Of a stretch of 64,000 nt of DNA, positions 57,745-63,538 are shown one piece after another. Numbering within the stretch: the first letter of the stretch is position 1; each line of letters starts with the position of its first letter. The position numbers and the translations under genes are program-made. The stretch is taken from assembly GCA_033442325.1 (NCBI GenBank), contig JAWQFM010000015.1, forward strand, positions 790,335 through 854,334, written 5' to 3'. This stretch comes from Salpingoeca rosetta. Taxonomy: Eukaryota > Protista > Choanoflagellata. A model generated the notes under the pieces. The model was not told where the DNA came from. It worked only from the letters and a program-made list of their open reading frames with translations, and searched no databases.

Positions 57745-58085
57745 GACAGACACACACACACACACACACACACAAAAAAAAAAGGTAAACAAAACAGGGG
57801 GTGCGATTAAGATGGAGAGACAGCCAACGCCCAACGAGGCAGAAAGACGCATGGTGTGCAAGCGTCAACGTGAGGGAGGAGGGATGTCGAGGACAGGACA
57901 GCAACCAGGGCGGCACAACCACGCAAGCACATATGGGGTTCAAGGAGCAGACAGCAGCGGCGGCGCATTGTTGACGAAGCGGTTGTACATCACACACCAC
58001 ACGTACAAGCGCACGTGTGCACGGTACAAAAGGGGACAGCGCGGTTCATGCAAGCAACCGCTCATGCACGGGCAGTGTGGTTGCT

Positions 58086-59063
58086 TCACGCGCGCATGAA
58101 CCAGTGCACAAAGGAGGAGCCGAGGCCAAGGTTGACGGGGACAAAGAGGAGGCAGTAGAGGATGGCATGGGTGTAGTGCTCGGTCCATTTGGTGGCCTTG
58201 ACGATGGAGCACATGTTGGCGATGCGCTGGAGGAGGAAGGAGGCCATGACATAGCGGCAGACGTGGTTGCGCTTGGGCATGTGCTCGCGGCGCATGACGT
58301 CCAAGATGAGCACGAAGCGCCGCTCGTCGCACTTGTTCCACGCGCGGTGGTAGTGGGCGTCGTTGAAGGCGAACACGCGGCCCTCCTTCCACTCCTGCTG
58401 CTGGTCGCCAATCTCCATGCCGGCATCGGGAAGGCCGGCGGGAACGATGAGGCCAAGGTGGCAGCGGTAGTTGGCGTTGGTGTCGCCGTAGTGCGGGGCA
58501 ATGGCCGACTGGGGCTCGAGCTGGGAGAAGGTGATGCCGACCACGCGCTCCCACTCCTCGCCGGGGAAGATGCTGTGCAGGAGCTGCATGGTCTTGGGGA
58601 AGAAGGAGCTGGCGCTGGGCGCCGTCACGCCCCACAGGCGCAGGGAGAGCACGCGCCAGCACGACTTGGAGGACATGCGGTGGGTGTGGCCAAAGGGGGC
58701 AAGGCGGCCGCCGGTGTTGGCCGTGTACGCCTTGAGCTCGTCGCGGATGGTGGTCCAGTTGGCCTCCAGCGGCTGCACAAACTCCTCGCGGGAGAGATCA
58801 AACACGAAGGGGTCCTTCTGCATGTCACATGCCTTCTCGAAGGTCTTGCGGCACTCAAACGCAAGGTACAGCTCGCCGGGCGCCGGGGGATCGAAACCAG
58901 GGCGCGTGAAGAGGTGCTTGTAGGTCAGGTACAGCCCCAGTGCTCCAGTGGCCCCGAGGACAGCGGGCCGCCACTCGTCCTTGATGGCAGCCGGCCAGCA
59001 TGGCAGCTGGCACGCAGACGCAGTCCAGTCCTTGACCAGCGCCGTTAGCGATGACACGTCCAT
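58086..59063 (-). CDS. Aspartyl/asparaginyl beta-hydroxylase-domain (ASPH/LpxO-like Fe/2OG dioxygenase) membrane protein, intronless, 325 aa
   Basis: LEANWTTIRDEL; FPKTMQLL; FSQLEPQSAIAPHYGDTNANYRCHLGLIVP; WKEGRVFAFNDAHYHRAWNKCDERRFVLILDV. Hydrophobic segments at both termini. Confidence 0.9.
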   Translation of the reverse strand: MDVSSLTALVKDWTASACQLPCWPAAIKDEWRPAVLGATGALGLYLTYKHLFTRPGFDPPAPGELYLAFECRKTFEKACDMQKDPFVFDLSREEFVQPLEANWTTIRDELKAYTANTGGRLAPFGHTHRMSSKSCWRVLSLRLWGVTAPSASSFFPKTMQLLHSIFPGEEWERVVGITFSQLEPQSAIAPHYGDTNANYRCHLGLIVPAGLPDAGMEIGDQQQEWKEGRVFAFNDAHYHRAWNKCDERRFVLILDVMRREHMPKRNHVCRYVMASFLLQRIANMCSIVKATKWTEHYTHAILYCLLFVPVNLGLGSSFVHWFMRA

Positions 59064-59396
59064 CGTCGTCGTTGCTGCTGCTGGGCTGAGAGACGAAAGA
59101 AGGAGAGCGAGGGGAGAGCGACAGGGAGGGGGGGGGGGTGAATGGGGGTGCGCAGTGTTGTTGTCCTGTTGTGTGTGTTGTGTTGTGTGTTGGGTTGTGG
59201 GAAAGTATCGCTGGCAGAACTTTTGTTTGCTTGCATCAGCAGCCACAAAACACCACACACAAGACGCACAACGAGAGAAGAAGGAGAGGGAAGAACAAGC
59301 AAGCAAGCGAAGTGTGCAGAAGCGCAGACCACCACACCCCCTCACTGTCGCTGTCGCTGCTGTTGAACACGATACGCACCACCGCCTGTGCAAGCC
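59064..59396. promoter_or_regulatory. Putative bidirectional promoter/5'UTR region between the two hydroxylase paralogs
   Basis: 333 bp separate the divergent ATGs at 59063 and 59397. No specific motif identified. Confidence 0.45.
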
Positions 59397-59938
59397 ATGA
59401 GTGAGCTGTCATTGGGATCGTTGCGGGTGCCGCTGTCACTGGACCTGCCGCCAGTGGAGGTGCCAGATGCGGTGAGGACTGGCCTCAAGTGGGCGGGCAT
59501 CGTGGTTGGTGCTGGCGCATGCACCGTCATGGCCTACCACACTGTTGCCGCCATCGTCTGCCGCCCCGCTCCCTGGTTCTCCTTCATCTCCTACGGAAAG
59601 GTGTGTTTGGTGTGTGTGTGTGTGTGTGTGTGTTTGTGTCTGTGTCTGTGTGTGTGTGTGTGTGTGTCTGTGTCTGTGTGTGTGTATGTGTGTGCGTGCG
59701 TGCGTATCTGTGTGTGTGTGTGTGTGTGTCTCTGTGTGTGTCTGTGTGTGTGTGTCTGTATGTGTGTGCGTGAGTGTAAGAGAGAGAGAGTGTGTGTATG
59801 TCCGTGTGTCTACATTCGCCTGGGCCTGTGTGTGTGTCTACATTTGCCTGTGCCTGTGTGTGTGTGTCTGTCTCTGTGTGTGTTTGTCTCTGTGTGTGTC
59901 TGTCTCTGTGTGTGTGTGTGTGTCTACATTTGCCTGTG

Positions 59939-59971
<33 letters not shown>

Positions 59972-60788
59972 CCACGCACCTGTTTCTAAACCCCCTGCAA
60001 CCCTTGTCGTTCTGCCAACCCACATCACCGACCCACAGACCAAGATGACGACGCCGTATTCGTTTGAGGACCCGCGCTTCTACCCGCGCGCCCAGCTGCC
60101 GTGGCTCGGGCAGCTCGAGCAGCACTGGGAGGAGATCCGCGACGAGCTGCAGGCCTTCCTGCGCACCATGCCCGTCCCCTTTGTGCCCTACTTCCGCCCA
60201 GACCTCGTCAACAAGGCCGGCGCGTGGAAGACGCTCGGCCTCAAGGCGTGGGGGCTCGAGGATCGCGCCATCATGCAGCACTTCCCAAAGACGTGCAAGG
60301 TTCTGCGAGACCTCCCCGTGCCCGTTGTCGGCGTGTCGTTCAACCACCTCGAGGCGCGCGGCGTGGTGAAGGCGCACCAGGGCAACACCAACGCCATCGC
60401 CCGCGTGCACCTGGGCCTAAAGGTGCCCAAGAACAAGACGGAGGACTGCTACTTCAAGGTGTCGAGTGATATCCGCCCCTGGCGCGAGGGGCAGGCCTTT
60501 GGGTTCTGCGACGCGCACTGGCACACGGCGTTCAACGGCGCTGACGAGAGCAGGTACATCCTCCTCTTCGACGCCATCCACCCGGAGTACACGCACATGA
60601 CCACGTACATCTGCGCGCGTGTTGTTGCGGACCTGGCACTGCAGTACTTTACCGGCCGCATTCGCCTGATCCAGTGGCTCACCAAGGTTGCGCCCACCCC
60701 GACACGTCTTGTCCTCTACAACACCTTTGTTCCCGTCTTCCACGTCCTTCTCCTGATCAACCCAGACTTTCTATCCTTCTTCTCGTAG
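59397..60788 (+). CDS. Second Asp/Asn beta-hydroxylase-domain membrane protein, 2 exons (intron 59601-60038)
   Basis: TM WAGIVVGAGACTVMAY; LEQHWEEIRDEL; WKTLGLKAWG; FPKTCKVL; FNHLEARGVVKAHQGNTNAIARVHLGLKVP; WREGQAFGFCDAHWHTAFNGADESRYILLFD. Confidence 0.9.
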
Positions 60789-61343
60789 TGTGATTGCGTG
60801 TGTGTGTGTGTGTGGGTGTTATGTGTGTGTGTGTGTGCGTGTACATGTGTCTGTCTGTCTGTTTATGTCTGCGTGTGTGTGTGTGTGTGCGTGTGTTTTG
60901 TGTGTGTGTGTGTGTGTGTGTGCGTGTGTGCGTTAGTGTGCGTCAATCTTTTGCTCTTTGGAGACGCGCAGCCCCCTTCCCCACCCACAGCCGTGCTTGT
61001 TTCGGCAGCTTGCTTGCTCGCTTGCTTCTTGTAGCCATTTGTCGGTTCTCTTTGTCACATTGATCGCCTTGACGCTGCGTCGTTTGCGCCTGCTGCTGTA
61101 GCCTTCAGCTTTTCTCCACCACCTCCACTTCCTTGGCTCCTCTTGCTTCACATCCACCATCATCAACAACGCTCGTTCGCTTGTGAGCGTCGCCTGTGTC
61201 CCGCCATCACCGCTTAAACGACTTGGAAGCTCCCGCAGATAGAGACACACAAACACAGCAGCACGCACGTGTATTAGCATAGATATCGACACTGCGTGTG
61301 TGTGTGAGGAGGGGGAGTGGACACACACACGTACACACACACA

Positions 61344-61766: not shown

Positions 61767-63538
61767 TCAGTGCTGCTGCGTGTCCGCTATTGCGCGAATG
61801 ATGTTGTAGAATGCATCGCCAGGCTGTGGGGCCGGCAAGTGGTAGGTGACGTTGTGTGCGAGGTGCGCAAGACGCACGCGCTTCGCCACCCGCTCGCGTC
61901 GCGAAACGTGCCCAAGAATGTCGAGAACACGTGCAGCGTCCTTCTCCGGCACGCGCACGGACGCGGCGTCCAGTTCCGCCGCAAGGTGCGGAAAGGGCCA
62001 CGTGTACCCGTCAGACACAATCACGGGGATGCAGCCCACGAGGACAGCCTCGAATATGCGCCGCGTGCCAGCTGTGAGGCCACGCGGGCACAGGCAGAAC
62101 TCCGACGTGGCCATCTCCGCAAGCGTGTCGCGCACAACCTGACGCACCAGCAGTGAGTGGGAGGAGCGGGGATTCTTGTCCTGCATCATCTTCACCTGCG
62201 CATCGTGAATCACGCAGTGCGGGTGGCCCTCCACCGCCTTCTTCAGCACCGTTCGCACGCGGTTGTTGGACAGCGTCCCTGCGAAGAAGAGAAACGTGTC
62301 TCGGGCACGCGCTGACGTCTGCGGTGCACGCACACCATTTCCCATGCGATTGCTGTTCGTGCTGCTACGGGTGTTGCTGCTGCTGGTGCTACTGGTGTTG
62401 GGGTTGGAGTGTTGAGCGCTCCGTGCTTGCCCCTTCCTGCTGATCACTCGCGGGTTGCTCATGGCCCACGTGGTGCTGTACTGCTGTTGTTGCTGCTGCT
62501 GCTCTTGTTGCCCTTGTTCATACGTTTGCTGCTGTTGTTGTTGTTGTTGTTTTTGTTGTTGTTGTTGCTGTTGTTGCAGGGTGACGTTTTCTGCCAGCGC
62601 GGCCACGGCCGCCGGCACATATGGCGGGATCTTGATGTCGCGACCGCGGATGAATCGGAGGACGCCCGGCCGCGGGTCGTCGTCCTCAACAGCGAGGAAG
62701 CGCACGCGGCTGTTGGCGCGCAGGAGGCGCAGCAGCGTGGGGCCCAGCAGCCGCTCAAGTGGCCGCTGCGACGACCACACCAGGATATGGTCGCTCCCGC
62801 GAGACCGCTGAAACCACGGGCTCGATGCCAGCTCAGACAGCAGCGCGTCCTGCAGCCGCGGCAGCAGGTCGCCCTCGTACATGCCAATGCGCCCATAGAA
62901 CCTGAGGGTGTGTGTGGGGGGGGGGAGGGTTAGGTGGTGGTGGTGAAGATGGTGGTGGTGGTGAGTGTGCTGGGGGACAAGCGGGGAGGGGGACAGAGCG
63001 ATGGCATTCTTAACACAAACAAACACGCACGCAGACACACACAGACGCACGCACGCAGACACACACTGCCCGTGACGTACGGGAGGAGAAAATGGGTGGC
63101 ATTTGCCGGATCCGTGGTGAAGAGAGGGCTGTGTGCGGCATGCAGCAAGTTCTCATGAAACACGTGCTCGGGGATGTACTGGTTGTGCTGGTTCCATTCG
63201 TTGTACACCCACCCTCGGTTGCGGTCCAAGATCTCCGCATTGATGGCGGCAAGCTTCGACGTGTTGCGAAGCGGGTACACGAAGAACCGCACGCCACCGT
63301 GCATGGACGGTGCCGCTACAGCAGGCCCTCCCCTGCTCCTTGTCGACGCTGGCCATCCAGCGTCCGACTCCACAGCCGCTGCCGCCACCGCCACCGCCAC
63401 AGCATCATCAACATCGCCGTGCCCTTGCTCTTGCGCCCTCGCGCTGCCACTGGCAACCAGCAACCCACACCCTACCACACCCACCACAACAGCCCACAAC
63501 AAGCGACCGTTGCTGGTGTTCGTGTTGTTGTTTTTCAT
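61767..63538 (-). CDS. Exostosin-family (GT47) glycosyltransferase, 2 exons (intron about 62902-63063)
   Basis: N-terminal anchor LLWAVVVGVVGCGLLVA; RFFVYPL; FTTDPANATHFLLPY; SPWFQRSRGSDHILVW; RDIKIPP; RDTFLFFAG; MATSEFCLCPRGLTAGTRRIFEAVLVGCIPVIVSDGYTWPF. Confidence 0.92.

What the first reader, a model, noticed from the sequence alone, without database searches (positions are those of the whole stretch)
58086..60788. Head-to-head, intron-poor pair of bacterial-like ASPH/LpxO-type hydroxylases
Seen: two diverged paralogs transcribed from a 333-bp spacer, with 0 and 1 introns, while most large neighbours have 10-20. Both have hydrophobic termini and the shared motifs H-x-G-[DN]-T-N-A-x-x-R-x-HLGL and F-x-DAH-x-H-x-A-x-N. 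Neither has the TPR region of animal ASPH. Established: membrane-bound bacterial members of this family (LpxO, OlsC) hydroxylate lipid acyl chains, and hydroxylated Bacteroidota sulfonolipids (RIFs) induce rosettes in S. rosetta. Inference: from memory the motifs resemble Bacteroidota proteins, so these may be horizontally acquired and duplicated lipid hydroxylases acting on host sphingolipids or prey-derived signal lipids.
Basis: partly seen in the sequence, partly recalled or inferred. Interest (0 to 1): 0.8.

Follow-up and report, generated by a model that had tools for sequence, protein, structure and literature searches.

The report
Bacterial-type hydroxylase gene pair in choanoflagellate
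Two neighbouring, back-to-back genes of the choanoflagellate Salpingoeca rosetta encode membrane-anchored iron/2-oxoglutarate hydroxylases that belong to a bacterial enzyme family (sister to the lipid hydroxylases LpxO and OlsC), not to the animal ASPH/ASPHD enzymes; they were most likely taken from bacteria before choanoflagellates diversified, and their substrate is still unknown.

Summary
The window is Salpingoeca rosetta. Gene A (PTSG_05985, 58086-59063, minus, no intron, 325 aa) and gene B (PTSG_05986, 59397-59600 + 60039-60788, plus, one 438-nt intron, 317 aa) lie head to head, 333 bp apart. Both carry one PF05118 domain, the quoted motifs, hydrophobic ends and no TPR. Both are transcribed, and B is spliced and polyadenylated.

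In two maximum-likelihood trees they fall inside a large family of short (~250 aa) bacterial proteins. That family is sister to true LpxO/OlsC and well apart from TPR-type ASPH and animal ASPHD2-like proteins. Orthologues of A, B and a third paralogue C occur in other choanoflagellates. A second species keeps the same pair, a 318-bp spacer and the same intron position, so the arrangement is ancient.

The donor is not established as Bacteroidota:
- A+C is sister to membrane-anchored proteins of marine Pseudomonadota.
- B is unresolved.
- One origin followed by duplication is not rejected (AU p = 0.12 and 0.18).

A published screen (Matriano 2021, Table S1) already lists PTSG_05985 as "foreign" and PTSG_05986 as "indeterminate". 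Lipid hydroxylation is the best guess. A link to rosette-inducing lipids is untested. The scan had also noted this stretch before (s1-431562).

The parts
58086..59063 (-). Gene A (PTSG_05985): intronless CDS, 325 aa, PF05118 domain at residues 100-258. N-terminal helix 29-52. C-terminal hydrophobic helices at about 292-324.
   Evidence: continuous stranded RNA cover without joints
57900..58085 (-). 3' UTR of gene A. It runs at least to the left edge of the stretch on which reads were laid.
   Evidence: first-mate-on-plus depth of 24-108 at 57900-58076
59064..59396 (.). 333-bp spacer between the two start codons. It acts as a shared, bidirectional promoter region. The 5' ends of the two transcripts appear to overlap inside it.
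   Evidence: B reads and the X13 contig start at about 59240-59266. A-strand reads reach about 59490 at low depth. The spacer is 318 bp in L001, with no clear sequence conservation.
59397..59600 (+). Gene B (PTSG_05986) exon 1: 68 codons, with a hydrophobic segment at residues 35-53 and the PWFSF motif.
59601..60038 (+). The only intron of gene B: 438 nt, GT..AG, phase 0, made of TG-rich repeats.
   Evidence: zero depth; an X13 contig joins 59598 to 60037. The position is the same in L001 (PWFSF + 5 residues).
60039..60788 (+). Gene B exon 2: 249 codons plus the stop. It holds the PF05118 domain and a C-terminal hydrophobic segment.
60789..61257 (+). 3' UTR of gene B, with poly(A) addition near 61233 and 61257.
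   Evidence: depth of 23-104 up to 61262, and loose ends made of A runs at 61233 and 61257
61767..63304 (-). Neighbouring GT47/exostosin-like glycosyltransferase gene (452 aa), convergent with gene B. It is not shown to belong to the pair.
   Evidence: The adjacency is kept in L031 but not in L001 or L033. It is expressed at lower depth.

Best explanation
A and B are two active, membrane-anchored Fe(II)/2-oxoglutarate hydroxylases with the ASPH fold. They belong to a large, uncharacterised bacterial family of short PF05118 proteins. That family is the sister group of the lipid acyl 2-hydroxylases LpxO and OlsC.

The family entered the choanoflagellate lineage from bacteria before the sampled choanoflagellates diverged. 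It now exists as three paralogues, A, B and C (C is PTSG_11028, elsewhere in the genome). A and B have stayed head to head around a promoter region of about 320-330 bp ever since. They gained hydrophobic anchors, one intron (in B), host codon usage and polyadenylation.

Shown here: gene structure, expression, family placement, conserved catalytic residues, and conserved synteny.

Inferred:
- Each enzyme binds iron through two histidines (A: H191 and H239) and binds 2-oxoglutarate through R249, H202 and R200.
- Each sits in a membrane, with the catalytic domain probably facing the cytosol.
- Each hydroxylates a membrane lipid or other amphiphile, most likely on an acyl chain.
- The shared promoter keeps the two in step.
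For: Domain and fold:
- PF05118 at E 1e-43 and 1e-38.
- AF2 model with pLDDT 90. Its best PDB matches are human AspH (E 8e-15, TM 0.76 to 5apa).
- The residues equivalent to AspH H679, R688, H690, H725 and R735 are invariant across A, B, C, the bacterial kin, OlsC and LpxO.

Bacterial kinship:
- All of the best 150 of 1.84 billion representatives other than the choanoflagellate proteins themselves score 159-287 bits, and most are about 250 aa.
- The named ones are Lysobacterales, Alteromonas, Oxalobacteraceae, Chitinophagales/Bacteroidota and cyanobacteria.
- The clade of the short family plus the choanoflagellate proteins is supported at 100/100* and 99/92*.
- It is sister to true LpxO/OlsC at 99/93*.
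- A+C is sister to marine Pseudomonadota proteins that have TM segments and bacterial housekeeping neighbours.

Genuinely eukaryotic genes:
- They lie on a 1.5-Mb scaffold, carry an intron, have poly(A) tails and give stranded RNA.
- Orthologues are present in Barroeca monosierra, Hartaetosiga balthica, H. gracilis and Salpingoeca infusionum.

Ancient pair:
- L001 has the same divergent pair, a 318-bp spacer and the same intron position.

Independent published screen:
- PTSG_05985 has Alien Index 81 ('FOREIGN'), no metazoan hit, and a last common ancestor at 'Urchoanoflagellate'.
- PTSG_11028 has Alien Index 114.
- PTSG_05986 has Alien Index 43.3, just under the cut-off of 45 (PMC7971027 Table S1).
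Against: - No substrate evidence of any kind. Scores against the LpxO and OlsC equivalog models are far below cut-off (63-93 bits against 500 and 450).
- Many bacterial family members look soluble (no strongly hydrophobic segment in those sampled). They sit in natural-product-like clusters with an NRPS-like A-T-TE protein, P450s, glycosyl-, acyl- and sulfotransferases and MacB exporters. This would fit peptide or small-molecule substrates as well as lipids.
- The backbone of the family tree is unresolved, so the donor is not known. It is also not settled whether there was one transfer or two.
- Most metagenomic relatives carry no taxon label, so a hidden eukaryotic or viral relative is not excluded.
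- Co-regulation rests on three runs of one study.
- The membrane topology is inferred only from hydropathy and from the charges flanking the first helix.
Confidence: 0.6

Rival explanations
1. The pair is not a local duplication. A(+C) and B descend from two bacterial paralogues that had already diverged. They arrived either in separate events or together on one DNA fragment from a bacterial tandem array.
For: - Both best trees place B away from A+C. A+C joins the P0207/P0208 group at 100/98* and 85 in FastTree. B joins other bacteria weakly (84/80).
- Bacterial relatives often stand in arrays of 3-5 deeply diverged paralogues. For example, the four L004 copies fall in different parts of the tree.
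- A and B are only 32% identical.
Against: - AU tests do not reject a single choanoflagellate clade (p 0.123 and 0.179).
- B has a long stem branch (0.6-0.8), which can pull it away.
- An inverted tandem duplication explains the adjacency more simply.
- No bacterial array with an A-like copy next to a B-like copy was found.
- Most bacterial arrays seen are co-directional, not divergent (a few loci also hold a copy on the other strand).
Confidence: 0.35
2. They are protein hydroxylases. Like animal ASPH, they hydroxylate Asp/Asn (or other residues) of secreted or membrane proteins such as EGF-like domains.
For: - They share the fold and the two-histidine iron site of AspH.
- The GO annotation carried in Table S1 of the published screen is peptide-aspartate beta-dioxygenase.
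- Iyer et al. 2010 predict protein substrates for some bacterial beta-hydroxylases (PMC2938197).
Against: - They lack the TPR domain that holds the EGF substrate in AspH.
- They are separated from the ASPH, TPR-ASPH and ASPHD groups by starred branches, and sit beside the lipid hydroxylases.
- The charge distribution suggests the catalytic domain faces the cytosol, away from secretory substrates (inference).
Confidence: 0.15
3. They tailor a small molecule or a carrier-bound amino acid or peptide, as remnants of a bacterial natural-product pathway, rather than a bulk membrane lipid.
For: Bacterial kin lie beside NRPS-like A-T-TE proteins, P450s, GT28/EryCIII-like and GT2 glycosyltransferases, sulfotransferases and MacB/HlyD exporters.
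Against: - No such partner genes flank the choanoflagellate pair in both species. GT47 is next to B only in S. rosetta and L031; RTC, a methyltransferase and NmrA lie nearby in L001.
- The nearest bacterial relatives of A+C are single genes with TM segments among housekeeping genes.
- The choanoflagellate proteins have membrane anchors at both ends.
Confidence: 0.2
4. Vertical inheritance: an ancient eukaryotic ASPH/ASPHD-like gene kept in choanoflagellates and lost or diverged elsewhere.
For: - Animals have membrane-anchored, TPR-less ASPHD1/2 of similar size.
- PTSG_05986 has a weak metazoan hit (Acropora, 33%, 1e-17).
Against: - ASPHD2-like proteins score only 47-70 bits against the choanoflagellate profile.
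- They lie on the far side of two starred branches.
- All eukaryote-labelled close hits that were looked up are choanoflagellates.
- PTSG_05985 has no metazoan hit in the published screen.
Confidence: 0.04

Closest known systems
OlsC (ornithine-lipid ester-linked acyl 2-hydroxylase, Rhizobium tropici type) and LpxO (lipid A 2-hydroxylase, Salmonella type)
   Same: - PF05118 Fe(II)/2OG oxygenase core with the same invariant His, Arg and Gly positions.
- Sister clade in the tree (99/93*).
- Membrane association: LpxO is an inner-membrane enzyme (PMC12971839).
- OlsC is the best-scoring curated model (81-93 bits).
   Different: - Far below both equivalog cut-offs.
- A separate clade of its own.
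- The substrates of OlsC and LpxO (ornithine lipids, lipid A) are not made by eukaryotes (PMC12971839 says ornithine lipids are absent from eukaryotes).
- A and B have an extra N-terminal anchor and different C-terminal helices.
Uncharacterised short bacterial PF05118 family (e.g. WP_100324508 of Lysobacteraceae bacterium NML91-0213; Chitinophagales, Alteromonas and cyanobacterial members; TM-bearing marine Pseudomonadota proteins P0207/P0208)
   Same: - Same clade (100/100* and 99/92*).
- 35-44% identity.
- Same motifs, HxGDTNA..RCHLGL and FxDAHxHxAxN.
- P0207 and P0208 share the longer size (335-345 aa) and hydrophobic N-terminal segments.
   Different: - Most bacterial members are about 250 aa without strong hydrophobic segments.
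- They are often in tandem arrays inside biosynthetic-looking clusters.
- The choanoflagellate genes have an intron, poly(A) tails and a divergent pair layout.
Human ASPH (AspH) oxygenase domain
   Same: - Same fold (TM 0.76, rmsd 2.7 A over 190 columns).
- Two-His iron site with Gly at the usual carboxylate position, and the same 2OG-binding Arg and His.
   Different: - No TPR domain and no long luminal stalk.
- 25-30% identity.
- A different clade.
Animal ASPHD1/ASPHD2
   Same: Single PF05118 domain, similar length, N-terminal hydrophobic segment, no TPR.
   Different: - Only 47-70 bits against the choanoflagellate profile.
- Separated by starred branches.
- ASPHD2-like proteins carry a Cys-rich stretch after the anchor (seen in P0044 and P0252) that A and B lack.
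Published HGT candidates of S. rosetta (Matriano, Alegado & Conaco 2021, Sci Rep; PMC7971027)
   Same: PTSG_05985 and the third paralogue PTSG_11028 are listed as 'FOREIGN', with bacterial best hits and a choanoflagellate-ancestor age.
   Different: - PTSG_05986 was scored 'INDETERMINATE'.
- The main text does not mention these genes or hydroxylases.
- Its held text and supplement give no tree, no synteny and no LpxO/OlsC placement for them.

Membership tests
PF05118 Asp_Arg_Hydrox / ASPH-fold Fe(II)/2OG oxygenases | Domain model above the gathering score | tested here: met
   148.9 and 132.7 bits against a cut-off of 22.6
PF05118 Asp_Arg_Hydrox / ASPH-fold Fe(II)/2OG oxygenases | Two-His iron site (HxG ... 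H) and 2OG-binding Arg and His | tested here: met
   In A, H191, G193, R200, H202, H239 and R249 align with AspH H679, G681, R688, H690, H725 and R735, and are invariant in A, B and C
PF05118 Asp_Arg_Hydrox / ASPH-fold Fe(II)/2OG oxygenases | Double-stranded beta-helix fold | tested here: met
   AF2 model with pLDDT 90.3; the top 11 Foldseek hits are all AspH
PF05118 Asp_Arg_Hydrox / ASPH-fold Fe(II)/2OG oxygenases | 2OG-dependent hydroxylase activity | not testable with these tools
   Needs an enzyme assay
Animal ASPH (EGF Asp/Asn beta-hydroxylase) | TPR domain preceding the oxygenase domain | tested here: not met
   No TPR family above threshold
Animal ASPH (EGF Asp/Asn beta-hydroxylase) | Groups with ASPH in a tree | tested here: not met
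   The TPR-type and ASPHD2-like groups lie across starred branches. No animal ASPH sequence was in the tree; human ASPH was compared only by profile score (111 bits).
Animal ASPHD1/ASPHD2 | Groups with named ASPHD2-like animal proteins | tested here: not met
   47-70 bits against the profile; a separate starred clade. ASPHD1 itself was not sampled.
LpxO (NCBIfam NF033391, equivalog) | Score at or above 500 bits | tested here: not met
   64.7 and 63.2 bits. The control LpxO scores 529.8.
OlsC (NCBIfam NF052565, equivalog) | Score at or above 450 bits | tested here: not met
   81 and 93.1 bits. The control OlsC (Phyllobacterium plasmid) scores 534.1.
LpxO/OlsC-type lipid hydroxylases in the wider sense | Hydroxylates an acyl chain of a membrane lipid | not testable with these tools
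   Only a sister-group position (99/93*) and the membrane anchors point this way
Short bacterial PF05118 family (unnamed) | Falls inside the clade of short bacterial proteins | tested here: met
   100/100* with branch length 1.12; 99/92*
Horizontally acquired gene (bacteria to choanoflagellate) | Nested among sequences of several bacterial phyla | tested here: met
Horizontally acquired gene (bacteria to choanoflagellate) | Not contamination: integrated, spliced, polyadenylated, present in several species | tested here: met
Horizontally acquired gene (bacteria to choanoflagellate) | Absent from other eukaryotes | tested here: inconclusive
   All eukaryote-labelled close hits that were looked up are choanoflagellates. 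PTSG_05985 has no metazoan hit. Most metagenomic hits carry no label.

The most novel reading that the evidence does not exclude
The A/B pair is a surviving piece of a bacterial gene array. Two already diverged tandem paralogues were taken up together. They have been held together for the whole choanoflagellate radiation because they work as one unit: a hetero-complex, or two successive hydroxylations of the same lipid. The substrate would be bacterial-type lipid taken up from prey (aminolipids, sulfonolipids or lipid A-like acyl chains). That would tie the pair to how choanoflagellates read or disarm bacterial lipid cues.
Probability: 0.12. Interest if true: 0.8.

Novelty: new member of a known kind. 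Interest (0 to 1): 0.45.

Why it matters
No enzyme of the LpxO/OlsC side of the ASPH superfamily has, to my knowledge, been characterised in a eukaryote. The known substrates of that side are bacterial envelope lipids.

Choanoflagellates eat bacteria, and their development is switched by bacterial lipids. A trio of bacterial-type, membrane-anchored hydroxylases kept since the choanoflagellate ancestor is therefore a concrete, testable candidate for lipid remodelling at that interface. S. rosetta is genetically tractable.

The conserved divergent pair, with its spacer of about 320-330 bp, is also a compact natural example of a long-lived bidirectional promoter in a close relative of animals.

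If the substrate turns out to be ordinary, this remains one more well-documented ancient bacterial gene in a protist.

Tried and rejected
- **Giant-virus origin.** The Atlas feature search named Nucleocytoviricota-rich clusters. Two IMG/VR scans gave no close relative: one found none, the other a single hit at 22% identity. A third, with a broad alignment, could not be run. This is a lead only.
- **GT47 as a fixed partner ('hydroxylate then glycosylate', s1-431562).** The adjacency is kept in L031 but not in L001 or L033. I do not treat it as part of the unit.
- **Spacer conservation.** The S. rosetta and L001 spacers do not align meaningfully.
- **Pair in a third species.** L034/L035 (A orthologue P0007) show no B-like sequence in 1.58 kb upstream. 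The contig may be a transcript, so this is uninformative.
- **Literature.** No paper in the library names PTSG_05985 or PTSG_05986 in its text. Nothing was found in the supplements of the S. rosetta iron paper.
- **Co-expression.** Only three RNA runs of one study were laid. Both genes are on in all three. The B/A depth ratio, from my own averaging of the depth bins, is about 1.1-2.2. That is too little to claim co-regulation.
Full report
**What is there**

The window is from Salpingoeca rosetta. The product of the plus-strand gene is identical to PTSG_05986, and the locus lies on the 1.5-Mb scaffold GL832969.1.

- Gene A is a single ORF at 58086-59063 on the minus strand, 325 aa.
- Gene B is 59397-59600 plus 60039-60788 on the plus strand, 317 aa. 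Its one intron is 438 nt, GT..AG, phase 0 and TG-rich.
- The start codons are 333 bp apart. The public gene models agree.

**Expression**

Stranded RNA reads of three 2026 runs cover A and B on opposite strands. There is no joint in A and no depth in B's intron. An older RNA contig joins 59598 directly to 60037. Runs of A as loose ends at 61233 and 61257 mark B's poly(A) sites. A's 3' UTR runs left of 58086. Both genes are therefore real, spliced or polyadenylated eukaryotic transcripts.

The 5' ends seem to overlap inside the spacer. B reads start near 59240-59266, and A-strand reads reach about 59490. The depth there is low.

It only skipped the TG repeats.

**The proteins**

- Each has one PF05118 domain (E 1.4e-43 and 1.4e-38) and nothing else above threshold, so no TPR.
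- They are 32% identical to each other.
- Aligned to human AspH, the motifs hold the two iron-binding histidines (A: H191 and H239, equal to H679 and H725). They also hold the glycine at the usual carboxylate position, and the 2OG-binding R200, H202 and R249 (equal to R688, H690 and R735).
- These positions are invariant in 18 choanoflagellate sequences and in bacterial kin, OlsC and LpxO.
- An AlphaFold model of A (pLDDT 90.3) matches AspH oxygenase domains best (E 8e-15, TM 0.76). It shows a long N-terminal helix (29-52) and a bundle of C-terminal helices (259-324).
- Hydropathy gives clear hydrophobic segments at both ends of B, a clear one at the C-terminus of A, and a weaker one at A's N-terminus.
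- Positive charges follow the first helix in both proteins. I read this as the catalytic domain facing the cytosol; this is inference only.

**Relatives**

A word-based search found orthologues of A at 51-69% identity and of B at 52-87%, plus a third group, C, at about 40%. Cluster look-up names them as Barroeca monosierra, Hartaetosiga balthica, H. gracilis and Salpingoeca infusionum.

An exhaustive profile search of 1.84 billion representatives gave 8025 hits at E no greater than 1e-3 and 293 at E no greater than 1e-30. Apart from the choanoflagellate proteins themselves, all of the best 150 score 159-287 bits, and most are about 250 aa.

Named relatives are bacterial: Lysobacterales, Alteromonas, Oxalobacteraceae, Chitinophagales and other Bacteroidota, and several cyanobacteria.

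Against the same profile, human ASPH scores 111 bits, bacterial TPR-type ASPH 90-130 bits, and named animal ASPHD2-like proteins 47-70 bits.

**Trees**

The first careful IQ-TREE analysis (LG+C20 PMSF) used 103 sequences. It gave clade A (100/99*), clade B (100/100*) and A+C (100/92*). All three lie inside one clade with short bacterial proteins (100/100*, stem 1.12). The backbone of that clade is unresolved.

The second tree used 86 sequences. It added a true OlsC and three true LpxO, verified with NCBIfam at 534 and 530 bits.

- The short family plus the choanoflagellate proteins (99/92*) is sister to LpxO/OlsC (99/93*).
- TPR-type ASPH and ASPHD2-like proteins lie outside.
- A+C is sister (100/98*) to five proteins that include P0207 and P0208.

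P0207 and P0208 are 335-345 aa and have N-terminal hydrophobic segments. They lie on contigs with EF-P, PGI, DsbD or MacB/ABC genes. One is a Pseudomonadota MAG and one a Tara Oceans scaffold.

B stays in the polytomy. Its only link is a weak one (84/80) to a mixed set with a Chitinophagales copy and an Alcanivorax protein.

Forcing A+B+C into one clade costs 13.2 and 21.6 log-likelihood units. It is not rejected (AU p = 0.123 and 0.179). The donor phylum and the number of transfers stay open.

**Age and synteny**

A 10.4-kb contig of another choanoflagellate-like organism (L001, 51-52% protein identity) has the same divergent A/B pair. Its spacer is 318 bp. Its B intron is at the same place: five residues after PWFSF, in phase 0. 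Its A gene is again intronless. The spacers themselves do not align.

The GT47 gene that follows B in S. rosetta also follows B in L031 (71% identity) but not in L001 or L033.

**Bacterial context**

The bacterial kin often stand in arrays of three to five diverged paralogues.

- In Lysobacterales, Alteromonas and Gloeobacteraceae, arrays or single copies are preceded by an NRPS-like A-T-TE protein.
- MacB/FtsX permeases lie nearby in Gloeobacteraceae, Oxalobacteraceae and a gammaproteobacterial MAG. HlyD, an APH kinase or a P450 follow in Lysobacterales loci.
- In Bacteroidota they sit with GT2, GNAT, MBOAT, sulfotransferases and a JmjC cupin.
- In one cyanobacterium they sit with P450s and a GT28.

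This points to tailoring of amphiphilic or carrier-bound molecules. It does not fix the substrate.

**Prior knowledge**

Matriano, Alegado and Conaco 2021 (PMC7971027, Table S1) list three relevant genes:

| Gene | Introns | GC3 | Alien Index | Call | Best hit | Other |
|---|---|---|---|---|---|---|
| PTSG_05985 | 0 | 0.89 | 81 | FOREIGN | Yoonia maritima | No metazoan hit; ancestor level 'Urchoanoflagellate' |
| PTSG_11028 (316 aa) | 1 | 0.86 | 114 | FOREIGN | Lysobacteraceae NML91-0213 | Ancestor level 'Urchoanoflagellate' |
| PTSG_05986 | 1 | 0.85 | 43.3 | INDETERMINATE | Chitinophaga, 40.5% | Acropora hit at 33% |

The main text does not mention these genes. The same paper gives a median of five introns per gene and 8.8% intronless genes. 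A's lack of introns is therefore unusual but not unique. By length budget, the nearest neighbours GT47 and the LRR kinase are also intron-poor.

**Verdict**

- A bacterial origin is well supported and partly published.
- The new points are the conserved head-to-head pair, the conserved intron position, the sister position to LpxO/OlsC, and the marine proteobacterial sister of A+C.
- Lipid hydroxylation is the most likely function (about 0.45). Protein or small-molecule substrates remain live alternatives.
- The link to sphingolipids or rosette-inducing lipids is untested speculation.

Noticed in passing
window 62372-62510 (inside the GT47 gene, 61767-63304, minus strand): RNA reads disagree with the reference inside the CAG/CAA (poly-Gln) repeat. 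Up to 98 reads have loose ends at 62488/62503. There are joints that 'go back' 24 or 30 bases, and one contig skips 85 bases. The repeat length or sequence differs between the assembly and the sequenced cultures. There is also a C>G difference at 62504.
   Followed up: no
L003 1-7345; L002; L011; L012; L009; L006 (bacterial loci): A recurring, apparently uncharacterised bacterial gene cluster. It holds an NRPS-like A-T-TE protein, one to five tandem PF05118 hydroxylase paralogues and MacB/FtsX and HlyD export genes, sometimes with an APH kinase or P450s. It occurs in Lysobacterales, Alteromonas sp. a30, Oxalobacteraceae and Gloeobacteraceae.
   Followed up: partly
L004, L015, L017, L019 (Bacteroidota MAG loci): Bacteroidota copies of the family lie beside GT2 glycosyltransferases, GNAT acetyltransferases, an MBOAT, two sulfotransferases and a JmjC-type cupin. 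L017 (labelled Bacteroidota) and L018 (labelled Synechococcus) are nearly identical, which suggests a binning error in one MAG.
   Followed up: no
window 59139-59492: The transcripts of A and B seem to overlap at their 5' ends, so each start site lies within the other's 5' UTR. The depth is low. A G-run at 59128-59139 shows a one-base length difference in some reads.
   Followed up: partly
elsewhere in the genome (PTSG_11028, not in this window): A third paralogue (316 aa, one intron) is listed in PMC7971027 Table S1 with Alien Index 114. It probably corresponds to clade C (P0009-P0011, P0066, P0067), which is sister to clade A.
   Followed up: partly
L031 1-3264 (Logan SRR14727191): The contig carrying the B orthologue at 71% identity has only 36% G+C, far below S. 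rosetta's 55-65% here. Yet it keeps the B-then-GT47 gene order.
   Followed up: no
window 58242-58243: G>C differences in about 6-30% of RNA reads within gene A's coding region, in all three runs. These may reflect an allele, a strain difference or an alignment artefact.
   Followed up: no
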